Below, piece after piece: positions 6,995 through 59,450 of a stretch of DNA of 64,000 nt. The notes under the pieces are model-generated. The model was not told where the DNA came from. It did no database searches and saw only the letters and a program-made list of their open reading frames with translations. The stretch lies in IMG/VR virus record IMGVR_UViG_3300010403_000705, positions 248,001 to 312,000 of that record. The stretch is one strand, 5' to 3'. Every line of letters starts with the position of its first letter. The stretch's first letter is position 1. Made by a program: the position numbers and the translations under genes.

Positions 6995-7447
6995 ATGAAA
7001 GTCTATATTCTCGCGGGCGCCAGTGGCAGCGGTAAGAGTCATCTAGCTTCGAAGATATGGGCTAGCCATCCAAAGGTGCTGGTATGTAGCGCCGACGACT
7101 ACCTCTATGATAGCCATGGCACTTATGTGTGGGGCGCGGATAAGCTCGCCGCTGCACACAACGAATGTCTGAAGAAGTTCATTGCTGCTGTTCAAGAAGA
7201 AGTGCCTGTGGTGGTGGTGGATAATACCAATACCACCATAGCAGAGATCGCGCCTTACTACAGCATTGCAGCCGCCTACGGCGCTGAGGTTGAGCTTGTC
7301 ATCCTCTTCTGCAATCCAGAAAAAGCCGTCAACCGTAACAAGCATAATACGCCGGCACCGGTAGTAACTGCCCAGATAAAGCGCCTCGGATGTCAAGAGC
7401 TTCCTTCGTTCTGGAAGTGTTCTATTCAAGTGATGTGCACAGATTGA
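6995..7447 (+). CDS. P-loop nucleotide/polynucleotide kinase (AAA_33-like)
   Basis: GASGSGKS Walker A, CSADDY, VVVDNTN, RNKH lid. Confidence 0.85.
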   Translation: MKVYILAGASGSGKSHLASKIWASHPKVLVCSADDYLYDSHGTYVWGADKLAAAHNECLKKFIAAVQEEVPVVVVDNTNTTIAEIAPYYSIAAAYGAEVELVILFCNPEKAVNRNKHNTPAPVVTAQIKRLGCQELPSFWKCSIQVMCTD

Positions 7448-9063: not shown

Positions 9064-9132
9064 GGCGTGGTAGAAAACCATAACCCATCCGCAAACTTCA
9101 GACATTATGTAGTTGGTGTGAGGTCAATCAAG

Positions 9133-11301
9133 ATGAAGAATCAGCCGCTGCCGATCGATGCCTTCTTGCCTGTTATTCTCGAAAGCGTTTCTTCTAATCC
9201 AGTCACGATCATTGTTGCCGAAACTGGCGCTGGGAAAAGCACGCGGGTTCCGCGTGCCTTGCTGGAAGCTGGCAAAAAAGTAGTGGTCACCCAACCGCGT
9301 CGTCTGGCTGCCGAATTGGTGGCTGAAAGAGTGGCGGCAGAGCACGGGTCTCCCATCGGTTCTTCTGTGGGATACAGGTTGGGCGGCGGGGTGCGAGTTG
9401 ATAACTCCAAGACTCGATGTTTGTTCATCACAGAGGGTCTGGCTCTGGTGCGTGAGCTGATGTCTTCTCAGGACTCCCATCACTCCTATGATGTGCTGGT
9501 GCTCGACGAAGTGCACGAATGGCACGAAGACATGGAGATTCTGGTTGCCTGGTGCCGGCGCGCTCTGGCAAGCAATGCGAAGTTTCGGTTGGTGCTGATG
9601 AGTGCCACCCTGGAAGCGCACAAGCTTTCTGAATACTTCGACGGAGCACCCATCATCAATGTTCCTGGTCGTATTTTTCCCGTGACGGTACAGGAACCCG
9701 AGGCGATGATTGAGGGCGATCAGAACCTGTGGAATCCCATCGTGCGCGACGTGACGCGATTGGTACAGCAAGGACGCAATGTCTTGGTCTTCGTTCCCGG
9801 CAAGCCCGAGATCTCTCAAGTCTGTGAAATGCTCAAGTTTACTGGGGCGAACGTTTTCCCTCTGCACGGCGAATTGGATAAAACAGAACGGCAGAAGTGT
9901 TTTGCCAGCTACTCCCATCCCAAGGTGATCGTCTCGACCAACGTATCACAGACTAGCATCACCATCGATGATATTGATGCAGTGGTGGATTCCGGTCTGG
10001 AGCGACGGGTGGAAGTGGTCAATGGTGTAGAGGGTCTGCGGCTGCGGTTGATCTCCAAAGCAGATTCTGCCCAGCGCCGCGGGCGCGCCGGTCGTTGTCG
10101 GGCAGGTATCTATATCGATCACAGCGATAACGCTTTTCGCACCATGCCCGGCGTGGGTTTTCGAGAAGAGTTTCCCATCCCCGAGATCTCTCGCGTCTTG
10201 CTTGACCGTGCGGTTCTTCGTCTGGCAATGGCGGATCTGGATCTGGAAGCTCTGGATCTGTTTCATGGTGTTTCTACATCTGAGGTGCATCTTGCCAAGG
10301 AAGTGCTTCGTGCGCTGGGTTGCCTGGGTGAGGGAATCCAGGTCACAGAGATTGGGCGACGCGTCTATCAGCTTCCCATCGGCGTTCGCTCTGCGCGGAT
10401 GCTGATAGAGGCTGAGAAGCGAGGATGCCTGAGTGAGGTGATGACCATTGCCGCCATCATCGAAAGCGGCGGAATCGTTGACAATAAAAACATCAACGAA
10501 GCAACTGGCATTCCCATCTGGCGCAATTTGGGCAGTGATAGCACCAGCGATCATCTGACCATGCTGAGAATCTTTCAGCATGCCACGGCAGGAAAGACCC
10601 CGTGGCGACAGCTTGGTTTGCACGGCAAAGGAATGTCGCAAGCCATAGAGACGCGCAAGGCATTGGAGTCCGCCAGCAAGAGAATCCTTGCCAGCGATTC
10701 CCATCGCAAAGGTACAACGGAAGATATCATTAAGAGCGTTTTGAGCGGCTTGGTTGATCAATTCCGAGCACGAACCACCAATCGTTGGGGAGAGTACACC
10801 TACGGCACTGACTGCCGGAAGCTCGGACAGACCTCCAGCGTTGTTGCCAGCGCCCATCAGTTTGTGGTAGGCATGCCTTTTGATATCTCTACCAAGAAGG
10901 GTGGGATCTTGGGTCTGCTGCAATTCGCTTCTGGAGTGAAGGTAGAGTGGGTGTTGGAGCTTGCTCCACATCTCTTCAAGGTACAGCGCGAAGCGCCGAA
11001 GTACGATCCGAATCTGGATCAGGTTGCTCGCACTACTACTGTTAAGTTCAGGGATCGCGTGGTGGCTAGCTTTGCCGATCCTTGCAATGAAGGAGATACT
11101 CTGGCGCAATATCTCTCGGAAGTTGTCAGTTTCAGCGATGCCTATGGCTATGGTTTTTATAGTTTGCCCGAGGCGTACCGCCGTGCTCTTCGAACTTTGC
11201 AGGGTCGTCCACGTCAGGTAGTACACACCCATCTCCGAAGTGTTTTGAGTGGGGTAGGTCGCCTGGCGAATGTAACGCCTTCTAGTTTGATGATGCAATG
11301 A
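9133..11301 (+). CDS. DEAH-box (HrpA/HrpB-like) RNA helicase
   Basis: LPI start, AETGAGKST, TQPRRLAA, DEVH, MSAT, PLHG, STNVSQTSITIDD, QRRGRAGR, HA2-like region. Confidence 0.92.
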   Translation: MKNQPLPIDAFLPVILESVSSNPVTIIVAETGAGKSTRVPRALLEAGKKVVVTQPRRLAAELVAERVAAEHGSPIGSSVGYRLGGGVRVDNSKTRCLFITEGLALVRELMSSQDSHHSYDVLVLDEVHEWHEDMEILVAWCRRALASNAKFRLVLMSATLEAHKLSEYFDGAPIINVPGRIFPVTVQEPEAMIEGDQNLWNPIVRDVTRLVQQGRNVLVFVPGKPEISQVCEMLKFTGANVFPLHGELDKTERQKCFASYSHPKVIVSTNVSQTSITIDDIDAVVDSGLERRVEVVNGVEGLRLRLISKADSAQRRGRAGRCRAGIYIDHSDNAFRTMPGVGFREEFPIPEISRVLLDRAVLRLAMADLDLEALDLFHGVSTSEVHLAKEVLRALGCLGEGIQVTEIGRRVYQLPIGVRSARMLIEAEKRGCLSEVMTIAAIIESGGIVDNKNINEATGIPIWRNLGSDSTSDHLTMLRIFQHATAGKTPWRQLGLHGKGMSQAIETRKALESASKRILASDSHRKGTTEDIIKSVLSGLVDQFRARTTNRWGEYTYGTDCRKLGQTSSVVASAHQFVVGMPFDISTKKGGILGLLQFASGVKVEWVLELAPHLFKVQREAPKYDPNLDQVARTTTVKFRDRVVASFADPCNEGDTLAQYLSEVVSFSDAYGYGFYSLPEAYRRALRTLQGRPRQVVHTHLRSVLSGVGRLANVTPSSLMMQ

Positions 11302-14364: not shown

Positions 14365-14610
14365 ATGAATGTAGGTTTGTCCTACCGCGGCGCCGTCATC
14401 CTGGATATGCTTAAAGCGAAAAACGGCAAGGTGCTTTCCCATCGTGCCATTGGACGGCGGCTTTGGAAAACCGATGCTCCTGCATCGTGGACTACCATGA
14501 TTGCAATTGAGATTGGCAAGCTGCGACGGATTGATTCCAATCTGCGTCGTCAGATTGTCAATGTACATGGCAAGGGTTACATGTTTGGATGCACTGTGCT
14601 CCACAAGTAA
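14365..14610 (+). CDS. stand-alone OmpR/PhoB-type winged-helix DNA-binding protein
   Basis: IL.ML....GKVLS...I...LW...I.KLRR...I.NVHGKGY pattern of the Trans_reg_C domain. Confidence 0.75.
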   Translation: MNVGLSYRGAVILDMLKAKNGKVLSHRAIGRRLWKTDAPASWTTMIAIEIGKLRRIDSNLRRQIVNVHGKGYMFGCTVLHK

Positions 14611-14675
14611 CCCATCAATCACAGATACATCACATAGACAGCAGTAACCAACATCAAGAAAAGGGAGACCTGAAT

Positions 14676-15041
14676 ATGAAGACCTACAGCAATCGTGACG
14701 GCAAGGTGACTGAGACCCGTGAGAGCGCCATGCGAAGGATCAGCACGGGCGACACGACCGCAAACGATCTTTCCCATCCGAATCAGCATGTCCGTCGAGC
14801 GGCGTGGCTGGCGAGCGACGCTCAGTTGCCGGAAGAGCCTGTCGCGCTGAAGCATCTGTTCGCTTCGCTGTGCCCTGGGGCTTTCAACAGGGTTTGCGCT
14901 CTCAAGAACGAAGGCGTTTCGCATGAGCCTCAGGAGGGAACCGATATCCCCATCAGTCTGATCTACTACAACGCGGCGGGAAGTTCCAAGCTCGCGGCGG
15001 CGTTCGTGGAGAAGCTTCCCATCTTCTTCGATCAGATCTAA
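14676..15041 (+). CDS. hypothetical protein
   Basis: GGGAG RBS, GC-biased codons. Confidence 0.7.
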   Translation: MKTYSNRDGKVTETRESAMRRISTGDTTANDLSHPNQHVRRAAWLASDAQLPEEPVALKHLFASLCPGAFNRVCALKNEGVSHEPQEGTDIPISLIYYNAAGSSKLAAAFVEKLPIFFDQI

Positions 15042-15247
15042 AAATATGACGATGTGAGGCGTGGGAACTGAAAGATAGTAGTCAGGCACAATGACAGGTC
15101 ATAAGGAAGAATTAAAATTCTTCCTTATGACGCTTAGTGCCATGCGCTTATTCTGACCCTGTAATGACTACCATTGGAGCGCAGCGCCTTACATCACGAT
15201 TTAATCCCATCTTTTGAGATGGCTTGAGCAAGGGTTAAAGGTGACCT

Positions 15248-15493
15248 ATGATTCTCGTGTCAAACATTAGACAAGATCTTAATAACAGTGGGCTTAACAG
15301 CCAATTGTCAGATGCTGATCTTCTGGGTGTATACGAAAAACTGTTTGCCAAAGGATATGATTATCACAATCATATTCTTTATATCCTTGCAGAGCTTCGT
15401 GGTACATCTCAACGCGAATTGCAAGAGACAATAGACTGGTGTGGTCCTGGTAGCTCCGAGGATATGGCATACTTTGACAAGGTATGTCCGTAA
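15248..15493 (+). CDS. hypothetical protein
   Basis: AGGTG RBS, ORF. Confidence 0.6.
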   Translation: MILVSNIRQDLNNSGLNSQLSDADLLGVYEKLFAKGYDYHNHILYILAELRGTSQRELQETIDWCGPGSSEDMAYFDKVCP

Positions 15494-15866
15494 ACCTCAT
15501 CAAGCAATAAGCACCAAGAGATTGTCATGCCACATCAAAAAAGGATCCCAGGGATCCCATCGGATATATAAACCTATACGATACTTGCGAAATGCAGAAA
15601 GAAAAGGTTTAACATTATGTTCTTCACGTGATGTGAGCGCTAAACTCTGTCAATGGGCTTGGATTTAGCTTTATAGGTAGCTCTCAGTAAAAAGTGAGCT
15701 TAGGATACAAGCTACGTCTGGTAAGATTGACAGAGACTCTAAGAGGGCGGCGCTAACATAAAAAGCCCTGCTAGTTTGTATCACCCATCAAATTAGGAGA
15801 ATACCTAGGAGAATATCAGCCATCAATACGATGGCGCTAATCTCGGATTACCCTCTCACTTGGCGG

Positions 15867-15949
15867 CTGTAATTTGGGGGTTCGAATCCCTCTGTGCTTT
15901 AGGCATAGCTCAATCGGTAAGAGCAATCGCTTTTAAGCGATCATTACAG
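15867..15949 (+). ncRNA. circularly permuted tRNA-like module within a long ORF-free structured region
   Basis: Order T-arm, closed acceptor hairpin, D-arm, anticodon arm, enclosed by CTGTAAT/ATTACAG. Confidence 0.7.
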
Positions 15950-16669
15950 TGTACCTTGTGAGTAAGGCGAAACTATTAGCTCTCCTATCAAAGCTCCCAT
16001 CCAAACACAGGATAAATCAATCCAAGTGCAATTCCTGTTTCCTGTTTTTTTGGAACCGTAAAAACGGTATGATTTACTCCTGACATAATTGTACGCCCGA
16101 TTCACTAACTAGGGCTATAGATACCATAGGGATAACTTAACGCTCTCCCATCAGATCGTAGCGTTACACGGGATGCAAGAGGCTTGCTGGGCGGACAAGG
16201 ATCCATCCGCAATATTGAAGATGCTGAGCATGCCATATATCACCAGGGTTTCCGGCTCAATGGGTTTGGAAACACTTTGATAGATGCAGATCATGACTGA
16301 ATACTCATTCAATAAAACCACCTAACACTTGCTATAACACCCATCATATAAGGCGGGTTAGATAAAGCTGAGGAAACCGTTGGGAAGTTGAGTTTTGATC
16401 GAGACCTTATGATGATTGCGCCTCGCGCATGAGGGTTGGTAGGATACCCATCTATCTACCAAGGCAATGTAGATCAAGACAACCGATATACCACGTCTTG
16501 AAGAACGTGGATCGCCAACGGAGCATTAGGGCTACGCTCAGCGCCCGCCTAATGTTTAACTTGTGGTTAGTGTATAGTTAACAAGAGACCCTTGTATTGT
16601 ACCCATCAATCTTGTTGATTATGTACTGTTCACAAGCTCATTGAAAAGTTATCATATCGAGGTGATATC

Positions 16670-19249
16670 ATGACGCGCGAAGCACCCAAAGGTTTTGAGA
16701 TCATTGTGGCTCCTGTCTGTGGCAGTGAGGAGAATGGCTGGAGAATCTGCGGAAACGATAAATTGCGTCAGGTTGTTCTTGATCCCATCAGCGCGGAGGC
16801 TCTGGCACTCTCAGAGCGTGGTTCTGGGTTGGTGGTCATTTTGCGCCCGCAGTTCAATGAGCCTCATCTGGGCAAATATGCTTTCCGGGAGTATCGCAGT
16901 TTTGATGGTGGTCTGTTTGAGGAGATTCATTTTACCCTCGGCGCCAACACTTCCAAGCAGAAGCGATTGGACAATGAGATCGTTCTTCCTTCGCCGCCCA
17001 TCTCTTAACACCTCTCATGGTGTGTAATGGTCTTGAAAGGTCATCATGCATTGTTACGATCCTTACAACGTATCACATGTGATTGCTTACTTTGGTTACG
17101 AACAAGTTTTTTGCCGCGTTGGCAATTACGATGATGCTGAAGTTCATGGGAACAAGATAGACCGTACCTTCACCCAAGGTCTTGAGAATCATCTTGCCCA
17201 TCGAGTAGGGATACACCCCGAAAACAAGCAGGGCTTTTTGTGGGTTGATAACAGTAAAAAAATCCATTACGGGATGTTCTATGATTGTGACTTTGTGCAC
17301 ATCGAATGGCACACCCATCGTGTATTCAAAGAGTCGGTGCCTAACAACTTCTCCCGCGGCAAATTCATGGTACAAGCCGCTTATCTAGAATATCTGCGGT
17401 TTCCCAATCATGGATCCACCATTCGAGTCACGCAGTACGTTGATGGTCCTAGAGACTTTATTAGGACTTCCAACAGATTCCATAATGAAACGCCCATCGG
17501 TGCTGTTCGTTTTGTAGTAGGTGTTGACAATTCTTTTTGGAAGCTGACTAACTGCGGCGACCAAGGTCTCACAACTACACGAATTAACATTCAGACACAA
17601 GGATACTAAGATGACTGAGAGAGTGAAGCTGTGGCGTCGACGAGATTTGATGTCAAGTAAACGCTTGGCGTCGTCATTGCTGACCGGATTGATGAGCAAT
17701 ACATCTGAGGCATGGAAGAATCCCATCAAGCTGGTTGAGATGTGCTATGCTATCTCTGATGAGTTCGTTCGTCAGTCCAACCGTCGTGGAGAAGGAACGG
17801 GGAAAAAGCGTCGCAAACGCTGATTAAACCTGGCGTTATCATTGTTCCCATCTTTAATGGAGAGTTTCATGGCTAAGGATCTGTTTATCGCAGCGGTATT
17901 TCTCTTGTGGGGCGGCGTCTATTTTGCAACGCCAAAGACGTATTATAATCCTCTCGTGGGATATTATACCGGACGATACACCAATGCCGCGTGGCTATGT
18001 TTCTTTGCGTCACTGGTGTGTGTCTGTGTGGGTCTAAGTGTGCTTCACTAATTCCCATCTCTAACATGTGGGAAGATAAAACATGAGCAAAGATTTTCCC
18101 ATTCCGGTGGTGGTGCTTCGCAAAGAGTTTTCACAGATACGCGGGCGCTCACATGCGGCAACCCGTCAGGAATTTCTGCAAGCTTGTCAAGCATATCTTA
18201 AAGAATACAAGCTACCTGAGACTCCTGACAATTGGGTACATGCTGCGAAGACGTGTCGTATTCACTGTCGTCGATGTGATGGCACGGGAATGTTTATTAC
18301 TGGCATGAGCAATGGTCAGCCCATCGGACCTGGTGGACCTTGTTATCGATGTAACGGCAAGGGTTGGCAGAATGATGCGGATGCTCGGCGCAACTTTGGT
18401 GCTGATATGCATCAAAAAGTAATTCTCTAACAGACCATCGGAAAAAGGAGATGTCATGTTCCTTGAGGAAAATCACGAGTATCTCCAAGTAAGTCGAGCG
18501 CTGAGCGAATTGGTAGCTGCCCTGACCCATCTGGACATTGCTATCCTGTGTAGTGACGCCACTTTGACAGATGCTCGCGCAGCAGTCGTCAAAGGAAAAC
18601 GGCAGCTTGAATTGCGAAAGGCAGAGATTCTGGCAAACCATTATCAATTGTTGGAGAAACATGGTATGCTGTGACAGATAGCATTGTCCTGAAGCCCACT
18701 GCTAAAGAAGAGCATCAGGCAAAAAGGCGATCTAAAAAAGAACGTAAGGGAAAATCTTAACGTTTCCCATCCACCGCACACTAAATAAGGCTCATATGAT
18801 CAATCAGATTGTTGAACAGTTTCTCATTGCTGCTTGTATCGCTACCATTGAGGCATCGGATCGTCTGACTGAGGAGTTTAACAACGCTATGAAAAACAGC
18901 ATCGCCAGCAATGGCTGGGGGATGTTTTCTCCTCCGGATATGGGCAAGATGCATGCCATGGCGGCGCTGGACTATAATGAAAAGCGATGGGTGCCGATGC
19001 TGAGCCTCATCGAATGCTAGCCCATCAGAAGGATTCTATACTATGAATATGAAGTGCGCTCCTGATAATCCCAATGCTGTCTTTTTTGTTATCGATGGAT
19101 TGCGTTGCATAGGCTCCAACCATCGTTGTCGGATGCCCATCATTGAGGATGATGCAATCTGGTGCGGAAGTACCACGGCTCCAGATATGGATAGCTTGTA
19201 CTATACAGATTTTGATGACGAAGAGGATGATCCTGTGGACCACACCTAG
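16670..19249 (+). other. cluster of small hypothetical CDS (16670-17008, 17046-17609, 17611-17823, 17869-18051, 18456-18674, 18796-19020, 19043-19249)
   Basis: Co-directional packed ORFs with RBS; terminator hairpin at 19279-19312. Confidence 0.6.
18083..18430 (+). CDS. protein with DnaJ-type zinc-finger repeats
   Basis: CRRCDGTG and CYRCNGKG (CxxCxGxG). Confidence 0.7.
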   Translation: MSKDFPIPVVVLRKEFSQIRGRSHAATRQEFLQACQAYLKEYKLPETPDNWVHAAKTCRIHCRRCDGTGMFITGMSNGQPIGPGGPCYRCNGKGWQNDADARRNFGADMHQKVIL

Positions 19250-34831: not shown

Positions 34832-35695
34832 ATGAGTAAATCAAAAGGTAAGCAACAGGTAAATATTACTATTCTTTACGGTCTGCCTGGTAGTGGAAAA
34901 TCCTTTTATAGTCAACGAAACAAAGAGACTAGAGTTGACTTTGATGCTATCATTAAGTCACATGGACCAAATAAATTTGCTGTTTTAAAAGAGCTTAATA
35001 GGCAAACAGAAATAAAATTATCAAGAAATTATTACTACACTAGAAACCATGCCGTAACTATTGATGGTTTGGTTACTACCAATCAACAGCTTCGAGATTT
35101 GATCGATTCCTTTACCAGTTACTTCCAACAATATCAGATCATTTTTAGGTTAGTATATTGGAATGAAGACCGAGAAGCTTGTCTTCATAACGATAAAAAC
35201 CGTCGTACAATTTCTGCGGCAGCGGCAATTAAATCTATGCCGTATGAAAAACCGCATTTTGATTCTTTTCCTGAACTATCCCAGAAAAGAATTCAACCTA
35301 TGAAGGTAGTGAAAAAGCATAATGCTATTTCATGGATCTCCCATCTGTTAAGAGAGTTGGATTATGATCCTATTCAGATCGAAACTATTACTGACACTAT
35401 GCAATTGGAATCTAAAAGCTGGTGTTTGGGCGGAGAATGTTGCACTTGGGATGATCAATCTTCTGTAGTAGAAGCACAGGCTCCGCGGCAGTTCGAGGAG
35501 CTTGATAGGCTGCTTGTATATATTAATCCTGAGATTACAGCTATAGATTTTAGACAGATAAAGGATATCTGTTGTAGTCTATTTCATTTTTCCGAATCAG
35601 ATTATTATGGCGGCAGCACCGATAATGCCAGACATGTATGTGATCTAAAACAGTTATATGAATGTTTACTAAATCTTCAATTCATAAATGAATGA
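34832..35695 (+). CDS. P-loop kinase (PNK-like) with extra C-terminal domain; paralog of 39995
   Basis: ILYGLPGSGKS, IDGL.TTN.QLR, EDREACL.ND..RR. Confidence 0.82.
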   Translation: MSKSKGKQQVNITILYGLPGSGKSFYSQRNKETRVDFDAIIKSHGPNKFAVLKELNRQTEIKLSRNYYYTRNHAVTIDGLVTTNQQLRDLIDSFTSYFQQYQIIFRLVYWNEDREACLHNDKNRRTISAAAAIKSMPYEKPHFDSFPELSQKRIQPMKVVKKHNAISWISHLLRELDYDPIQIETITDTMQLESKSWCLGGECCTWDDQSSVVEAQAPRQFEELDRLLVYINPEITAIDFRQIKDICCSLFHFSESDYYGGSTDNARHVCDLKQLYECLLNLQFINE

Positions 35696-36612
35696 GATAC
35701 TATAATCATATGCTTTTTAATCCTAGTGATTATCTGGTACAGAAAATTTCTTTGCTAGAAGACTATTTCATTCAATTCGGAATTGATGCAGTAGTTTTTG
35801 GAATGTCTGGTGGTGTAGATTCAGCAGTAGTTGCTGGAATTCTCAAGCGTTGTCAATCACTCAAACGAGTGATTGCAGTGGCTGCACCCATCTCTTCTAA
35901 GGGAGCTACTAATCAAGATGTGGCGGCAAATCGAGCGGTCAAACAATGTGAGGCTTTTGACCTTGAAGTATGGAAGCTTGATCTTACCCCCGCTCAGTTT
36001 TGTTATGAAGGCATCATGAGATGTTCCCCATCTAATGCAGAGGGTGAGAGAAGAGTATGGGCAGACGGACAGATCCTTTCAATTGCTCGAACTCCTTTGT
36101 TTTATGGTGTGGCTGCGCATCTGCAAGCTGAAGGATATCGGGCTGTGGTTTCTGGCACCACGAATCGTTCCGAGGGATCATATATTGGATTCTACGGTAA
36201 AGGTTCAGACGGTATGAATGACATCCAACCTATCTCAGATATGTGGAAGTCTCAGGTCTTTGCACTAGCCAATCATCTGGGAGTGATTCCTGAAATTATC
36301 AATGAGAAACCGCGTGGAGATGTTTGGGATTCTCGTTGTGATGAAGAGATGATTGGCGCCACTTATCCTCAGATAGAAGCTTATCTAGAAGCTAAATGTC
36401 TTAGTTTTTCAATGAACCCATTTTCGCCCGCAGCCACGTCTTACCAAAAAATGGTTGGTGCTGAAGCGATAGAAAAACTTCATAGCATCAATCGTCATAA
36501 ATATCTAGTCGGGTCCCCTGCTATTCATTTTGATATTCTTGATCGCCATATACCGGGTGGATGGTCTGAAATGAATAGTTATACCCATGTCCTTGGAAGA
36601 CGTTATGTCTAA
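35692..36612 (+). CDS. nadE: NH3-dependent NAD+ synthetase
   Basis: GMSGGVDSAVV, GTTNRSE, GFYGKGSDG..DIQPI.D..KSQV..LA..LG, DEEMIG.TY. Confidence 0.9.
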   Translation: MRYYNHMLFNPSDYLVQKISLLEDYFIQFGIDAVVFGMSGGVDSAVVAGILKRCQSLKRVIAVAAPISSKGATNQDVAANRAVKQCEAFDLEVWKLDLTPAQFCYEGIMRCSPSNAEGERRVWADGQILSIARTPLFYGVAAHLQAEGYRAVVSGTTNRSEGSYIGFYGKGSDGMNDIQPISDMWKSQVFALANHLGVIPEIINEKPRGDVWDSRCDEEMIGATYPQIEAYLEAKCLSFSMNPFSPAATSYQKMVGAEAIEKLHSINRHKYLVGSPAIHFDILDRHIPGGWSEMNSYTHVLGRRYV

Positions 36613-42540: not shown

Positions 42541-42632
42541 GGGAGCATAGCTCAATGGTTAGAGCAACCGCCTTATAAGCGGTTTACCGGCTGATTACCG
42601 GAAGCGTGGGGGTTCAAGTCCCTCTGCTCCTA
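42541..42632 (+). tRNA. tRNA with TAT anticodon (Ile) and a long variable arm
   Basis: GGGAGCA/TGCTCCT, GCTC..GAGC, ACCGC-CTTATAA-GCGGT, CCGG/CCGG V-stem, GGGGG-TTCAAGT-CCCTC. Confidence 0.8.
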
Positions 42633-42944
42633 CTAAGACCCATCGGCTTACATCTTTAGGTGAATAATTATGGATACAGGAACTATATCATATCATCCTG
42701 ATAATATAGGCGGAAAGCTTATTATTAGCGTTATGTCAAATGGTAAACTTGCAATAGATGTAAAATCACATGGATATAATCTTTACATGTTTACTTTTGA
42801 TTTGGAGTCAGCCAAGAATTTGAGAGATGCTCTTTGTTCTGCCATTGAACAAATGGCAATTAACATAAATTTTCCGTCAGATTCATAATCATCTTCCTGC
42901 TATCTTTTTATAAGAGCAAAGTGATTGTTGAGAGTAGACTTTCC

Positions 42945-47605: not shown

Positions 47606-48179
47606 AAGACTCAAAAATGCGCGACTTATTTACTCCGGGCACGGTGTTTGTTTTGGGCGTTCTAATTCTATATTTTGGTGCACATATTGCACTTCAATAT
47701 ATAGCAACCCATCCAGAATATCCAGGGCAGTTACCTTGTAAATGTGAGTCTAAGTGAATCTCCAATAGATTTTGTTCTCCCGCCTTTAATGCTGGATCCA
47801 CAAGTAAAGCATTATTGTTTCGTCTAAGTTGCTCCACGCAACATCCATCATTGTCAATGATGTGCGACGTGACATAAAAATATGACAGAGATTTTCCACC
47901 CAATTGCTTTTGCTTTGGGCAAAGAGGATATTATTTAGTATTTAATCCATGAATTATGCGAGGTTGAAATTGGTTTCTTCCTGAGTATAAACTCTGCTTG
48001 AAGAGATTTATCTTAACGTAAACCTACCAATTCCTCTAGTTCCAGAGAATGGATTTGATAACGCATAACTAGGAATGATAAAAATAATAAATAGTTTCGG
48101 CATTTGTTCAATATAGCAATTAAAAGCAACACTCGGCTCTGGATACTTCAGACATCTAAGTCATATTTTTAAGACTTCT

Positions 48180-48438
48180 TGCACTGAACTCGCGCAGGTC
48201 TAAATAAACCTCTCATGGTGATACAGAATCACTTCTGCAACCGGAAATGGGTTTAGCCTGGGTCAATCTGTTCATGATGACAGATACATAGTAGATAGCC
48301 AAAGTGATAGGCTAACTCTGACAAAGATAGCATGGTAGACCCATTTATCTACGTCGGAGTCTTGTCTTACTACAGTAATGTTCAGAATTTTATTCTGAAT
48401 TAGGGGCGCGAGCTTTTGAAGTAGATGACCTAAGTGCA
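48180..48438 (+). ncRNA. candidate pseudoknotted structured RNA
   Basis: Three long-range pairings plus several internal hairpins in an ORF-free region; T tract follows. Confidence 0.45.
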
Positions 48439-48478
48439 TGTTTTTTTGATGACCAGTACAATTTTTAGAGGATGAATT

Positions 48479-55237: not shown

Positions 55238-55711
55238 ATGAGTAAAATTCTAGTTAAGTGTATCAAACGTGGTTCAGATGGTCAAGTGGATATGCAGCGG
55301 ACGAAGGAAAGTTATGAAAGTGCTCTTCTGGAAGATTTTGCAAAGGCGATGACCTTAGCTGAGCAGAAGCTTCAGAAAGCTTATGAGGAAGGTCGTAGTA
55401 GTTTTGATGCAGATCTAGCTGCATATCTGAGTCAGAGGGCAGAGTGGGACGTACTTTCTAAGACATATATTGATCGAGCATTCGATCGATTCTCTAATTC
55501 AGCTAAGGGAGGCTGTATCACTAAGCCCACACTGATCAATCTTTGTATTACTTCAATGGCTCATGACAAGGTTATTGATATGTCGCAACTACCTAAAGCA
55601 CGAGAGATGGTAGCGGCATTTATTACTGACAATACAGATTCGCTATACACAGTAGAGAAGGGTATTGATGGTGGTGTTCGCCGGATCCCAGTACCTACCG
55701 TAGAAAGCTGA
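55238..55711 (+). CDS. hypothetical protein, paralog of 25882
   Basis: GAGG RBS; K...DG..D...K, F..NT...KG.DGG similarity; 34-bp palindrome at 55731-55764 follows. Confidence 0.75.
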   Translation: MSKILVKCIKRGSDGQVDMQRTKESYESALLEDFAKAMTLAEQKLQKAYEEGRSSFDADLAAYLSQRAEWDVLSKTYIDRAFDRFSNSAKGGCITKPTLINLCITSMAHDKVIDMSQLPKAREMVAAFITDNTDSLYTVEKGIDGGVRRIPVPTVES

Positions 55712-55797
55712 TCGCTCGTATCAATAATTAATATGACCGGAGGTGTTAACACCTCCGGTCATATCTATTGAAAATTTCAAGCAATTAGGAGCTGTTT

Positions 55798-56920
55798 ATG
55801 AGTGTTAGTGCAAAAGATGTCTTAATTGCTCAAGCAGAGCGCCTGCTTATGGTAATTCCTAATACATATAAGAATTTCTCTCTTGGAAGAATTCAGGAGA
55901 AAATTTTTGAAATGTATGAGTCAGAAAAGCAGAATCCACCAACTGGTATTAGGGCACAAGAGTTAACCACTTTGATGTGGCATTGGTTAGAGGCATACAA
56001 TGCGTTTGTCATGGATCCAAATTTTGAAGAAAGTGTTAGTAATTTTGGAATTATTTCTATTAGACTAATAGAAGGAATAAGTGTCATAACAACTTTTTGT
56101 TGTGACCACGAGCATTTTTTATCTCTACCTTCTGTTGTTTATTATGACAAACTTTACTTAGGAAAAGCTGGTTGGAATAGTTCGGCTAATCGTTGTTATT
56201 ATCGCAGCGATGATGCGATTGTCATTAGTCTTAATAAGAAGAAAATCGAATCAGTCAAGCAAGAGATTTTTAACTGTCCTAAATGTTTAGTTAAATGGAC
56301 AATAAATGGTTCAAAGGCTACCTCTGGCATTTACACAGTTGAAGTACAAGATGTATACAAAGGCATTGGGATGTCTAATAGTAGATGGATGAGATGTTCT
56401 AATTGTAACATTATAAGCTGGATTCCTTATACTAAAAAATAGGTTTGTCATCCAACAATGTTTCAATATCTTTTGCGGATAGATCTAAAGTTGATATTCT
56501 TAAACGTGGATCGGGATCCTCGGCATGGTAAAAATATTTCAAAAAATTCTTATAGAGCAAGCTGAAAAAATAGTAAATGCTGATAAGGGTGCTTTACAAG
56601 ACTATACTCTTGATCAAATCAGAGAAATCATTCGAGGCATCTATACTCTAGAGAAACTTCGTAGATTAAAACCAAGATCGGAACTATGGAATTGGCTTTT
56701 AACCTTCGATTACATGATGCGATCTGACTGTCATGATTCAACTATGTATGGGGTATGTAATTTAGAATGGAGCAATAGTTCAGTTTGTTTGATAGTATCG
56801 TGTTATGATTACCATCATTGGGAGTCACTCCCATCAGTAGTTGAATTTAAATCATATTCGCTACAAAAAAGAGGCTGGGATGCAATCGATAATACTTGTC
56901 GATATATGAGTACCAGTTAA
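55798..56920 (+). other. two paralogous hypothetical CDS (55798-56442, 56525-56920)
   Basis: Shared LI.QAE, LPSVV, GW....N.C.Y motifs. Confidence 0.7.
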
Positions 56921-58226: not shown

Positions 58227-59450
58227 ATGTCAGATTGGAAGCCACAAGTTGTAAAAATCTGCAAAGTAGAAAAGCATTTTAATGCTGATACCTTGGATAT
58301 TGTTTTCACTTCAATTGGTGACTATCCAATTGTTACCAAGCTGGGTGAGTACCACGTAGGTGATTTAGCAGTATATATTCCAATTGACACCATCGTTCCT
58401 GATGTTAATGAATTCTTTTTCCTTTGTCCCAAACATGAAGGAAGTGTCATTCCTAAATATGAATTAGGTTGTGTTCCAGAGCGCTATCGACGAATTAAAG
58501 CAAAGAAGATTCGTGGACAATATTCACAAGGCATGTTGATTGCGTGCCCTCTGTACATTAATGGTCATCTTGTGTCTGCATCTGAGATGATGCAGAGTGG
58601 CATGCCTGAGGAAACAATTCTATCTCTTGATGTAGTTAAGATTTTGGGTCTTACTAAGTGGGAAGAAGAGGAAGAAGAAGCTTCCGATCTTTATGCAAAG
58701 AAAGCTAAAGAACACACGCAAACAGAAAAAAGACCTGAAGGTTGGTCTATTCCTTACTATGATATTGATGGTTTGAGAAAGTGTTCAGATTGTTTGGCTC
58801 CTGATGAAGAGATTGTTTTAACTGAAAAAATTCATGGGGCGAATGGTAGTTTTTGCCATGATGGATCTAGGTTGTGGGTAAAATCTCGCAATTTGTATAA
58901 GAAAGGGGAAATTGAGGTTCCAGTATATGAAGAGTTAGTTAGTGATGTTATTGAAGAAACTGGAGAGCAAATTAAGCAGCATGTGCGTGTAGGAACCAAG
59001 ATGATTCCCTCTACTGATCAGTGGTGGGAAGTTGCACGACGCTTGGGTTTAGAAGACAAGTTATCTCAATATCCAGGTCTGGTTTTCTTTGGCGAGGTAG
59101 CTGGACAGGTTAAAGGTTTCCGATACGATGCTAAAATTGTAGATGAAAAACTACAACCATGTCTATATCTTTTTGATGTATGGGATCTCAAATCCATGAG
59201 GTATTTGGATTATGATGATCGCATTTCATTGATTCAGTCGCTTGATTTAACGCCAGCCCCACAACTTTATAGAGGTCCTTGGCTTGGTAAAGAAAAAATG
59301 TATCCTTATGCTGAAGGAAAAACAACTACTAGCGGTAAGCATATTCGAGAAGGTTTTGTCTTGAATACAATTAAAGAAAGATTTGAGCCGCGATTAAATG
59401 GTAGGATGCAAGCTAAGTTGGTCGGAGAATCCTACAATCTTCTAAAGTAA
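58227..59450 (+). CDS. RNA ligase, Rnl2/DRB0094-like
   Basis: N-terminal H.NAD.L...GD..VY.P.D, RG..SQG; TEKIHGAN motif I, FGEV.G, LFDV, REGFV, K.V.E.Y. Confidence 0.88.
   Translation: MSDWKPQVVKICKVEKHFNADTLDIVFTSIGDYPIVTKLGEYHVGDLAVYIPIDTIVPDVNEFFFLCPKHEGSVIPKYELGCVPERYRRIKAKKIRGQYSQGMLIACPLYINGHLVSASEMMQSGMPEETILSLDVVKILGLTKWEEEEEEASDLYAKKAKEHTQTEKRPEGWSIPYYDIDGLRKCSDCLAPDEEIVLTEKIHGANGSFCHDGSRLWVKSRNLYKKGEIEVPVYEELVSDVIEETGEQIKQHVRVGTKMIPSTDQWWEVARRLGLEDKLSQYPGLVFFGEVAGQVKGFRYDAKIVDEKLQPCLYLFDVWDLKSMRYLDYDDRISLIQSLDLTPAPQLYRGPWLGKEKMYPYAEGKTTTSGKHIREGFVLNTIKERFEPRLNGRMQAKLVGESYNLLK

What the first reader, a model, noticed from the sequence alone, without database searches (positions are those of the whole stretch)
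15670..16600. Roughly 0.9-kb ORF-free structured region that hosts the permuted tRNA
Seen: no ORF of 60 aa or more in any frame between 15669 and 16669 in an otherwise densely coded genome. There are long-range complements (AGGCGGG at 16351 with CCCGCCT near 16544; GGCGCTA near 15833 with TAGCGTT near 16159) and local hairpins (CCACGT/ACGTGG, TTGGTAG/CTACCAA). CCCATC spacing is maintained through it. Inference: a large phage ncRNA, comparable in size to GOLLD/ROOL-class RNAs, with a tRNA-mimic domain.
Basis: partly seen in the sequence, partly recalled or inferred. Interest (0 to 1): 0.62.

Follow-up and report, generated by a model that had tools for sequence, protein, structure and literature searches.

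The report
Permuted tRNA mimic in megaphage gap
The longest gene-free stretch of a ~433-kb soil megaphage holds a ~180-nt rearranged tRNA look-alike of the bacterial "Y RNA" (YrlA) type, plus a few other local RNA folds. Nothing shows that the whole stretch is one giant structured RNA.

Summary
The ORF-free stretch is real. Window 15669-16669 is the longest span without an ORF of 60 aa or more in the 432,844-bp phage record, and it probably runs 15494-16669. No stop-codon reassignment fills it.

Its one recognisable element is a ~182-nt plus-strand module (15806-15987). It has a canonical T arm, a closed acceptor-like hairpin, a canonical D arm and an anticodon-like arm with a 6-nt loop, all on a ~30-bp interrupted stem. 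Rfam's only credible hit is YrlA (Y RNA-like): core only, 28.3 bits, below the curated cut-off.

The genome encodes Ro60/Rsr, RtcB and a Pnk-like kinase, but rsr lies 131 kb away. The module opens at the variable-arm position, not the anticodon stem as in YrlA. Its D/anticodon half is closest to the phage's own tRNA-Ile(UAU).

The rest of the gap holds three further locally stable plus-strand folds and about 350 nt with no above-chance structure. There is no GOLLD/ROOL similarity. No homologue turned up, even in the sister megaphage, so covariation is untestable, and no RNA data exist.

Verdict: a new topological variant of a known kind of tRNA mimic in a multi-element non-coding region. The "single large ncRNA" reading is unsupported.

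The parts
15494..16669 (.). Non-coding gap. The strictly ORF-free part (no ORF of 60 aa or more) is 15669-16669. The longest such gap in the genome.
   Evidence: alternative stop readings do not fill it
15645..15735 (+). Local fold A: a perfect 10-bp closing helix (15645-15654 / 15726-15735) around nested hairpins.
   Evidence: I7; z -3.15 for 15494-15805
15806..15987 (+). tRNA-mimic (YrlA-like) module: the whole element, including its interrupted basal stem.
   Evidence: MFE -65.4 kcal/mol, z -4.29, 0/200 shuffles; minus strand z -2.27; flank-flank cofold z -3.3
15806..15873 (+). 5' strand of the exit stem (UAGGAGA, GCUAAU, CCUCUCAC, GCUGUAAU), with a side hairpin at 15819-15835.
15876..15892 (+). 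T arm: 5-bp stem and a canonical UUCGAAU loop.
   Evidence: YrlA alignment
15893..15907 (+). Closed acceptor-like hairpin (4-6 bp, 3-nt loop) with the UA linker. Too short for a real 7-bp acceptor stem, and has no CCA.
15908..15924 (+). D arm: GCUC / GAGC stem, loop AAUCGGUAA with G18 G19.
15926..15941 (+). Anticodon-like arm: 5-bp stem and a 6-nt loop UUUUAA (one nt short of a decoding loop).
   Evidence: closest to tRNA-Ile(UAU)
15943..15987 (+). 3' strand of the exit stem. Contains GGCGAA (15966-15971) in an internal-loop region; this resembles the Rsr-site motif GNCGAA but lies on the 3' strand.
   Evidence: motif definition from PMC4201824
16045..16051 (+). T7 run about 60 nt after the module. 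A possible weak end of a module transcript (inference only).
   Evidence: read from sequence; not flagged
16346..16556 (+). Local fold C: four stacked long-range helices, closed by AAGGCGGG / CCCGCCUU, around three hairpins.
   Evidence: z -3.32, 0/200; minus strand z -2.06; no Rfam match
16557..16645 (+). Long imperfect hairpin D (27-nt arms), ending 25 nt before the next gene. The AGGTG ribosome-binding site is at 16660 and the ATG at 16670.
   Evidence: (I1)
15542..15558 (-). Intrinsic-terminator-like hairpin with a T run, on the minus strand at the left edge of the gap.
42541..42633 (+). The phage's own tRNA-Ile(UAU) with a long variable arm. It is the closest relative of the module's D/anticodon half (39 of 44 aligned bases).

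Best explanation
**What it is.** The gap is a multi-element non-coding region on the plus strand of a soil megaphage, not one giant RNA. Its core is a ~182-nt tRNA-derived RNA (15806-15987).

**Shown from sequence and folding.** The RNA has a circularly permuted cloverleaf: T arm, closed acceptor-like hairpin, D arm, then an anticodon-like arm. All the elbow-forming nucleotides are intact. The cloverleaf sits on a long interrupted stem that leaves it at the variable-arm position.

**Inferred origin.** It most likely arose from the phage's own tRNA genes through a dimer or tandem arrangement. This is the origin proposed for YrlA.

**Inferred function.** It probably works like bacterial and phage Y RNAs of the YrlA class. 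The L-shaped elbow would be offered to tRNA-binding enzymes. The stem, with its GGCGAA internal loop, would dock the phage-encoded Ro60/Rsr ring. The result would be an RNA quality-control or repair particle acting alongside the phage's RtcB ligase and Pnk-like kinase during infection.

**The rest of the gap.** Fold A, fold C and hairpin D are separate local structures. They are probably leader, processing or regulatory elements of the same early transcription unit.
For: - The gap is real and unique in the genome.
- YrlA is the only meaningful Rfam hit: 28.3 bits, E 1.5e-3 for the region and 9.5e-5 genome-wide. It is the only such site in 433 kb.
- Phage YrlAs that sit directly upstream of Ro60 genes in other viral contigs score only 33-39 bits with the same model. 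The curated cut-off of 69 is therefore strict for phage members.
- Conserved tRNA features are present: T loop UUCGAAU, G53-C61, D loop with GG, the UA linker, A15/U48.
- ARAGORN draws a cloverleaf after the halves are swapped.
- The fold favours the plus strand: z -4.29 against -2.27 on the minus strand. Flank complementarity is beyond shuffles.
- The D/anticodon half matches the phage tRNA-Ile(UAU) at 39 of 44 bases. The T half matches T arms of phage tRNAs.
- The genome encodes Rsr/Ro60 (vWA_Ro60 6e-18; PDB Rsr 2nvo 1.6e-13), RtcB (303 bits) and a Pnk-like kinase at window 6995-7447.
- There is no YrlA-like site, and almost no intergenic space, next to rsr.
- The centroid fold keeps only local domains.
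Against: - No homologue of the module or region exists anywhere I could search. That includes the sister megaphage, which has Rsr at 81% identity. There is therefore no covariation or conservation evidence.
- No RNA-seq data exist.
- The module is 131 kb from rsr, whereas known YrlAs are adjacent to it (PMC4201824).
- The Rsr-type motif is absent from the 5' strand. GGCGAA occurs once, on the 3' strand, and G.CGAA occurs about once per kb in this island.
- The score is below Rfam's gathering threshold, and only the T-AS-D core aligns.
- No promoter or terminator could be assigned.
- The resemblance to tRNA-Ile rests largely on the generally conserved D arm.
Confidence: 0.5

Rival explanations
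1. Non-functional relic. The module is a recently rearranged or decayed pair of tRNA genes (a pseudo-tRNA), lying in a stretch of decaying intergenic DNA in a fast-evolving early region.
For: - It is a singleton, absent from the sister phage.
- Its halves resemble the phage's own tRNAs.
- The acceptor is too short and the anticodon loop has 6 nt, so it cannot decode.
- The surrounding genes are ORFans with no relatives.
Against: - Every tertiary-interaction nucleotide of the elbow is intact.
- The anticodon stem differs from tRNA-Ile by a compensated pair.
- The flanks form about 30 bp of stem beyond shuffle expectation.
- No protein-coding remnants are detectable by tblastx in the gap.
- A dense genome keeps its longest non-coding stretch here.
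Confidence: 0.22
2. One large (0.9-1.2 kb) structured ncRNA of the GOLLD/ROOL size class, with the tRNA mimic as one domain.
For: - The whole-gap fold is somewhat better than shuffles: z -2.8 on plus, from only 20 shuffles.
- Four plus-strand-biased local domains sit side by side.
- GOLLD and ROOL are often phage-borne and lie near tRNAs (my own knowledge).
Against: - No Rfam hit to any large-RNA family at E up to 10.
- The centroid fold has no long-range scaffold.
- 15990-16340 gives z -1.25.
- No homologues, so no covariation.
- A T7 run after the module suggests separate units.
Confidence: 0.1
3. A DNA-level or cis-regulatory region. Options are promoters and a leader for the downstream early operon, a replication or packaging element, or a ~1.07-kb minus-strand transcript running from a weak promoter-like site near 16620-16647 to the minus-strand terminator at 15542-15558.
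For: - A minus-strand intrinsic-terminator-like site lies at the left edge, and a 9/12 promoter-like site on the minus strand at the right edge.
- Hairpin D and a small hairpin presenting the ribosome-binding site lie just before the ATG at 16670.
- The longest non-coding stretch of a phage is often regulatory (general knowledge).
Against: - Promoter-like hits are at background level: 6 found against 3.9 +/- 2.0 expected.
- All domains fold better on the plus strand.
- The T and D loops are canonical only on the plus strand.
- There are no iterons or AT-rich block and no skew change.
- No tyrosine integrase in the genome, so an attP reading fails.
Confidence: 0.1
4. The gap is filled by micro-ORFs (under 60 aa) that encode small proteins.
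For: - Weakly positive codon scores for 16151-16321 (minus strand, 56 aa, +9.9 bits) and 16184-16300 (plus strand, 38 aa, TTG start, +6.3 bits).
- The island is full of small genes.
Against: - These scores are within the range of antisense or shadow frames.
- No usable ribosome-binding site before the plus-strand candidates (read).
- The largest plus-strand ORF (16429-16581, 50 aa) scores -7.7.
- The candidates cover under 20% of the gap.
Confidence: 0.05

Closest known systems
YrlA (Y RNA-like, Rfam RF02553): Salmonella YrlA and its orthologues in over 250 bacteria and phages (PMC4201824; structure in bioRxiv 10.1101/312249)
   Same: - The order T arm, closed acceptor-like hairpin, UA, D arm.
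- Conserved elbow nucleotides, no CCA end, and mounting on a long stem formed by the 5' and 3' flanks.
- The genome also encodes Ro60/Rsr and RtcB.
- The proposed origin from dimeric tRNAs fits the resemblance to the phage's own tRNAs.
   Different: - The exit stem leaves at the variable-arm position, and a closed anticodon-like arm is kept. YrlA exits through the anticodon stem and has a V loop before T.
- GNCGAA is on the 3' strand, not the 5' strand.
- The module is 131 kb from rsr instead of adjacent.
- It is ~182 nt against ~110 nt.
- It scores 28 bits (core only) against a cut-off of 69.
Deinococcus radiodurans Yrn1
   Same: A Y RNA with a T-arm mimic and an 'anticodon arm' of 5 bp with a 6-nt loop (PMC4201824). 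This is the same odd arm geometry as here.
   Different: - Yrn1 keeps the normal tRNA arm order and lacks a full D arm.
- It is encoded next to rsr.
- There is no sequence match here.
Thermus phage phiLo Yrl1/Yrl2 with phage Ro60 (PMC12135203)
   Same: Phage-encoded Ro60 with phage-encoded Y-like RNAs carrying a CGAA motif in a stem-bulge-stem. The phage Ro60 structure 9KOP/9L5Y matches this phage's Rsr at 2e-13.
   Different: - Yrl1 and Yrl2 lie directly upstream of Ro60.
- They are not described as tRNA-like.
Circularly permuted tRNA genes of the red alga Cyanidioschyzon merolae (my own knowledge, not checked here)
   Same: The 3' half (T arm) is encoded upstream of the 5' half (D and anticodon arms).
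   Different: - Those genes mature into real tRNAs after circularisation and end processing.
- Here only 13 nt link the T stem to U8. A 7-bp acceptor with discriminator cannot form, and the anticodon loop has 6 nt.
GOLLD / ROOL large phage-associated ncRNAs
   Same: Phage-borne, near tRNA genes, several hundred nt without ORFs.
   Different: - No covariance-model similarity at E up to 10.
- No evidence for a single large fold or for conservation.

Membership tests
YrlA (RF02553) | T stem-loop with a tRNA-type T loop | tested here: met
   15876-15892: GGGGG / UUCGAAU / CCCUC, aligned to the model.
YrlA (RF02553) | [quoted passage not shown] | tested here: met
   15893-15907: 4-6 bp with a 3-nt loop, UA at 15906-15907.
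YrlA (RF02553) | D stem-loop with conserved GCUC / GAGC stem and a GG in the loop; pyrimidine at the last V position (Levitt pair) | tested here: met
   15908-15924. A15 with U at 15875 allows A15:U48 (criteria and 10.1101/312249).
YrlA (RF02553) | 5'/3' stem leaves the tRNA-like domain at the anticodon-stem position, with the V loop upstream of T | tested here: not met
   The stem GCUGUAAU / AUUACAGU (15866-73 / 15943-50) leaves at the variable-arm position. A closed anticodon-like arm (15926-41) lies between D and the stem.
YrlA (RF02553) | GNCGAAN0-1G Rsr-site motif near the 5' end | tested here: not met
   None on the 5' strand. The only G.CGAA in the gap is GGCGAA at 15966, on the 3' strand and followed by AC. 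The background rate is about 1 per kb.
YrlA (RF02553) | Encoded next to the Ro60/rsr gene | tested here: not met
   rsr is at G000 395103-396695 and the module at 263806-263987, about 131 kb apart. Control phage YrlAs lie a few hundred nt upstream of Ro60.
YrlA (RF02553) | Score at or above Rfam's gathering threshold (69 bits) over the full model | tested here: not met
   28.3 bits, model positions 29-81 of 114 only. Rsr-adjacent phage YrlAs score 33-39 bits.
YrlA (RF02553) | Binds Rsr/Ro60 and carries tRNA-type modifications | not testable with these tools
   Needs EMSA or co-IP and modification mapping.
Functional (permuted) tRNA gene | 7-bp acceptor stem with discriminator/CCA, and a 7-nt anticodon loop | tested here: not met
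   Only 13 nt between the T stem and U8; 6-nt loop UUUUAA. ARAGORN on the swapped halves calls 'tRNA-?(tt)', and its acceptor was completed only by my poly-A padding. Not called in the native order.
Two-piece (permuted) tmRNA | Recognised by ARAGORN or the Rfam tmRNA-clan models; alanine-type acceptor with CCA; tag reading frame | tested here: not met
   ARAGORN finds none here. Rfam tmRNA matches the T arm only, at 10.5 bits. The genome has a standard tmRNA elsewhere.
GOLLD / ROOL / other large ncRNA families in Rfam | Match to the family covariance model | tested here: not met
   No hit at E up to 10 in 14950-16900, on either strand.

The most novel reading that the evidence does not exclude
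A newly born class of phage Y-RNA-like tRNA mimic, made by permuting the phage's own tRNAs at the variable arm. It keeps a Lys/Ile-like anticodon arm and works at a distance with the phage's Ro60/Rsr, RtcB and Pnk-like kinase, or as a decoy for host anticodon nucleases. It would be expressed from the early, GC-rich, CCCATC-studded island. On this reading it would be direct genomic evidence for the 'tRNA-dimer origin' of Y RNAs.
Probability: 0.2. Interest if true: 0.7.

Novelty: new variant of a known kind. Interest (0 to 1): 0.45.

Why it matters
- **Known background.** Y RNAs that mimic tRNA are known partners of Ro60 in bacteria and some phages. Their effector and their evolutionary origin are still open questions.
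- **What this element adds.** It keeps the conserved elbow but opens the cloverleaf at a different place. It retains an anticodon-like arm, and a likely parent tRNA is still present in the same genome.
- **If it is functional.** It would show that tRNA mimics of this kind arise repeatedly from tRNA genes, and that a Ro60 partner need not be encoded next to rsr. It would also give a compact construct for testing what the elbow recruits.
- **If it is not functional.** It is a cautionary example of a tRNA rearrangement relic that resembles a Y RNA.

Tried and rejected
**Searches for homologues (all blank)**
- blastn against 50,697 phage records.
- The neighbouring proteins in IMG/VR, and the 187-aa one also in the 5.8-billion-protein set, found only itself.
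- A two-sequence profile of the upstream ORF found only the sister phage.
- A DNA pattern for the T-AS-D core in IMG/VR gave tandem tRNAs and classical YrlAs but no relative.
- The same pattern in JGI metagenomes found only the source contig Ga0134123_10000001.
- A covariance model of the module (R1) against the whole sister megaphage G001 and the Ro60-bearing fragments gave a best score of 11 bits. The one 20.5-bit hit (L011) is a pair of adjacent tRNAs.

**Expression**
- Only the source soil DNA run holds the region and there are no RNA runs.
- I therefore did not use read laying.

**Coding checks**
- Alternative stop readings were tested only as a check on the ORF-free claim, and none fills the gap.
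- tblastx of the gap against both megaphages found no gene remnants.

**Other readings tested**
- attP / tRNA-fragment: no tyrosine integrase in the genome.
- Two-piece tmRNA: rejected.
- Y RNA next to rsr in this genome: the intergenic space is only about 50-140 nt and there is no YrlA-like hit.
- Shared promoter motif in island intergenic regions: nothing convincing. GCTATA and TTAGGT are enriched but few.
- CCCATC presented in unpaired loops: rejected. Mean unpaired probability is 0.394 for both the motif and composition-matched controls.
- Atlas look-up of the downstream 112-aa protein: no lead.

Full report
**Setting.** The window is G000:C1:248001-312000 of a 432,844-bp virus record. The source is the soil-metagenome contig Ga0134123_10000001, 447,633 bp. 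The phage carries 39 tRNA genes and a tmRNA. It also encodes RtcB and a Ro60/Rsr orthologue.

**Observation.**
- No ORF of 60 aa or more lies between 15669 and 16669 in any frame.
- This is the longest such stretch in the whole genome.
- Reading TGA, TAG or TAA as sense does not close it. That was a check only; I claim no alternative code.
- The 75-aa GTG ORF abutting the gap on the left has a negative codon score. Real neighbours score +10 to +35 bits. The non-coding span is therefore probably 15494-16669.
- tblastx finds no gene remnants in the gap.
- The GGCGCTA / TAGCGTT pairing needs two G-U pairs and is used in no predicted fold.
- CCCATC continues through the gap at the density of its surroundings.

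**What is in the gap.** Rfam at gathering thresholds finds only four ordinary tRNAs in the window. At E up to 10 the only meaningful hit in the gap is YrlA (Y RNA-like), at 15874-15924 on the plus strand. It scores 28.3 bits and covers model positions 29-81, which are the T arm, a closed hairpin and the D arm. It is the only such site in the whole genome.

**Fold of the module.** Folding 15800-16010 gives a ~182-nt module (15806-15987), read 5' to 3':
- an interrupted stem of about 30 bp, whose top helix is the 8-bp GCUGUAAU / AUUACAGU;
- UU;
- the T arm (15876-92);
- an acceptor-like hairpin (15893-15907);
- the D arm (15908-24);
- a 5-bp arm with a 6-nt loop UUUUAA (15926-41);
- the returning strand of the stem.

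The z-score is -4.29 with 0 of 200 shuffles as good, against -2.27 on the minus strand. The two flanks pair better than shuffled flanks: z -3.3, 2 of 500. The T loop, G53-C61, the GG of the D loop, the UA linker and an A15:U48 pair are all present. These are the features that define the YrlA tRNA-like core (PMC4201824; 10.1101/312249). When the two halves are swapped in silico, ARAGORN draws a cloverleaf with a 2-nt 'anticodon'.

**Why it is not a working tRNA.** Only 13 nt link the T stem to U8, so no 7-bp acceptor can form. There is no CCA, and the anticodon loop has 6 nt. It is not a two-piece tmRNA either.

**How it differs from YrlA.**
- In YrlA the stem that carries the Rsr site leaves at the anticodon-stem position. 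Here it leaves at the variable-arm position and a closed anticodon-like arm is kept.
- The GNCGAA motif is missing from the 5' strand. One GGCGAA sits in an internal loop of the 3' strand (15966), but such hexamers occur about once per kb here.
- The module is 131 kb from rsr, and rsr has almost no intergenic space beside it.

As a control, the same DNA pattern recovered classical YrlA modules in other viral contigs. Those score only 33-39 bits over the full model. In the two contigs that could be tested they lie a few hundred nt upstream of a Ro60 gene. Rfam's 69-bit cut-off is therefore strict for phage members. Adjacency to rsr is typical for the family and is not met here.

**Origin.** The D/anticodon half is most like the phage's own tRNA-Ile(UAU) at window 42541-42633. 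That tRNA has an unusual long variable arm. The match is 39 of 44 bases, with one compensated stem pair and a one-base-shorter loop. The T half resembles T arms of several phage tRNAs. This fits the published idea that YrlA-type RNAs arose from dimeric tRNA transcripts (10.1101/312249). The D arm is conserved among tRNAs in general, so I treat the parentage as suggestive only.

**Rest of the gap.**
- Fold A (15645-15735) has a perfect 10-bp closing helix. The z-score is -3.15 for 15494-15805.
- Fold C (16346-16556) has four stacked long-range helices around three hairpins. The z-score is -3.32 on the plus strand and -2.06 on the minus strand.
- Hairpin D (16557-16645) ends 25 nt before the next gene.
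- The stretch 15990-16340 folds no better than chance, z -1.25.
- The centroid of the whole-gap fold keeps only these local domains.
- None of them matches any Rfam family.
- Promoter-like hits are at background level. One intrinsic-terminator-like site lies on the minus strand at 15542-15558.

**Conservation.** None could be found. The sister megaphage G001 (446.5 kb, Rsr 81% identical) shares only scattered protein homology around this locus. It has no counterpart of the module or the gap. Searches of IMG/VR, JGI metagenomes, the phage collection and the protein databases return only the source contig. Only the source DNA run holds the sequence and no RNA run does, so I did not use read laying. 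Covariation and expression, the two decisive tests, could therefore not be made.

**Context that bears on function.** Besides Rsr and RtcB, the island around the gap encodes two relevant proteins:
- a Pnk-like P-loop kinase at 6995-7447 (phrog_505, 4e-10);
- a DEAH-type helicase with an HA2 ratchet domain at 9067-11301.

Jumbo phages are known to combine RNA ligases, kinases and, rarely, a TROVE protein 'with a tRNA-like partner' for RNA repair (PMC7824862). A Thermus phage Ro60 binds phage-encoded Y-like RNAs and host PNPase (PMC12135203).

**Verdict.**
- The tRNA-mimic reading is right.
- The single GOLLD/ROOL-size RNA is not supported.
- My best reading (confidence about 0.5) is a multi-element non-coding region whose core is a tRNA-derived, YrlA-like mimic with a new topology. 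It plausibly partners the distant phage Rsr.
- A non-functional tRNA rearrangement relic remains a serious rival (about 0.2).
- I file it as a new variant of a known kind. It works like a YrlA but fails three of that family's defining tests: exit position, 5' motif and rsr adjacency.

Noticed in passing
window 1-31000 (G000 ~247-280 kb), decaying to about G000 360 kb; also G001: **Compositional island.** The genome is about 30% GC, but GC jumps to 45-61% within about 1 kb at G000 ~247 kb, then decays over roughly 100 kb.

**One-strand motif.**
- The same span carries CCCATC on the plus strand only: 183 of the 186 sites in the window lie on the plus strand, against about 28 sites expected on both strands together.
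- It occurs in all three reading frames (27/21/13), with no extended context.
- Close spacings are too rare: 5% under 70 nt against 29% expected.

**Sister phage.** G001 shows the same pattern: 352 against 4 sites, GC up to 70%, and a sharp onset followed by a gradient.

This is a nucleic-acid-level signal of unknown function. The motif is not preferentially unpaired in predicted folds.
   Followed up: partly
window 15050-15200: A very stable element just upstream of the gap: a perfect 15-bp hairpin inside a longer stem. The z-score is -5.3 on the plus strand and even stronger on the minus strand in 150-nt windows. No T run follows it and there is no Rfam match.
   Followed up: partly
window 42541-42633; G000 58637-58710; G000 55645-55997: - tRNA-Ile(UAU) of 93 nt has a 21-nt variable-arm insert, which is unusual for a class I tRNA.
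- A tRNA with anticodon CUA (amber-suppressor type) lies elsewhere in the genome.
- A phage-encoded tmRNA with tag ANDNAFVPMAQAA also lies elsewhere.
   Followed up: no
window 6995-7447, 9067-11301, 35692-36612; G000 363250-364554, 395103-396695: An RNA-repair and RNA-metabolism gene set:
- a Pnk-like kinase;
- a DEAH/HA2 helicase;
- RtcB;
- Ro60/Rsr.

A NAD synthase homologue is also present.
   Followed up: partly
L025:2850-3000 and L024:2880-3000 (upstream of rsr in G001 and G002): About 140 nt of non-coding sequence directly upstream of rsr is conserved between the two relatives and contains UUCGA(A/G)AUAG. It may be their Y RNA. G000 has a different, AU-rich 58-nt hairpin there.
   Followed up: partly
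window 47904-48478; G000 316083-316754 and 323219-323739: Further ORF-free stretches of 520-670 nt with no tRNA and no Rfam hit, in the GC-gradient region.
   Followed up: no
window 14589-15041: The real start of this ORF is probably Met30 (14676), judging by alignment with its G001 homologue (40% identity over 95 aa). It is one of the few island genes shared with the sister phage.
   Followed up: yes
window 15794-15815: A tandem direct repeat, TAGGAGAATA, occurs twice 12 nt apart at the 5' foot of the module. The second copy forms the basal helix, and the first could pair in its place (D14).
   Followed up: no
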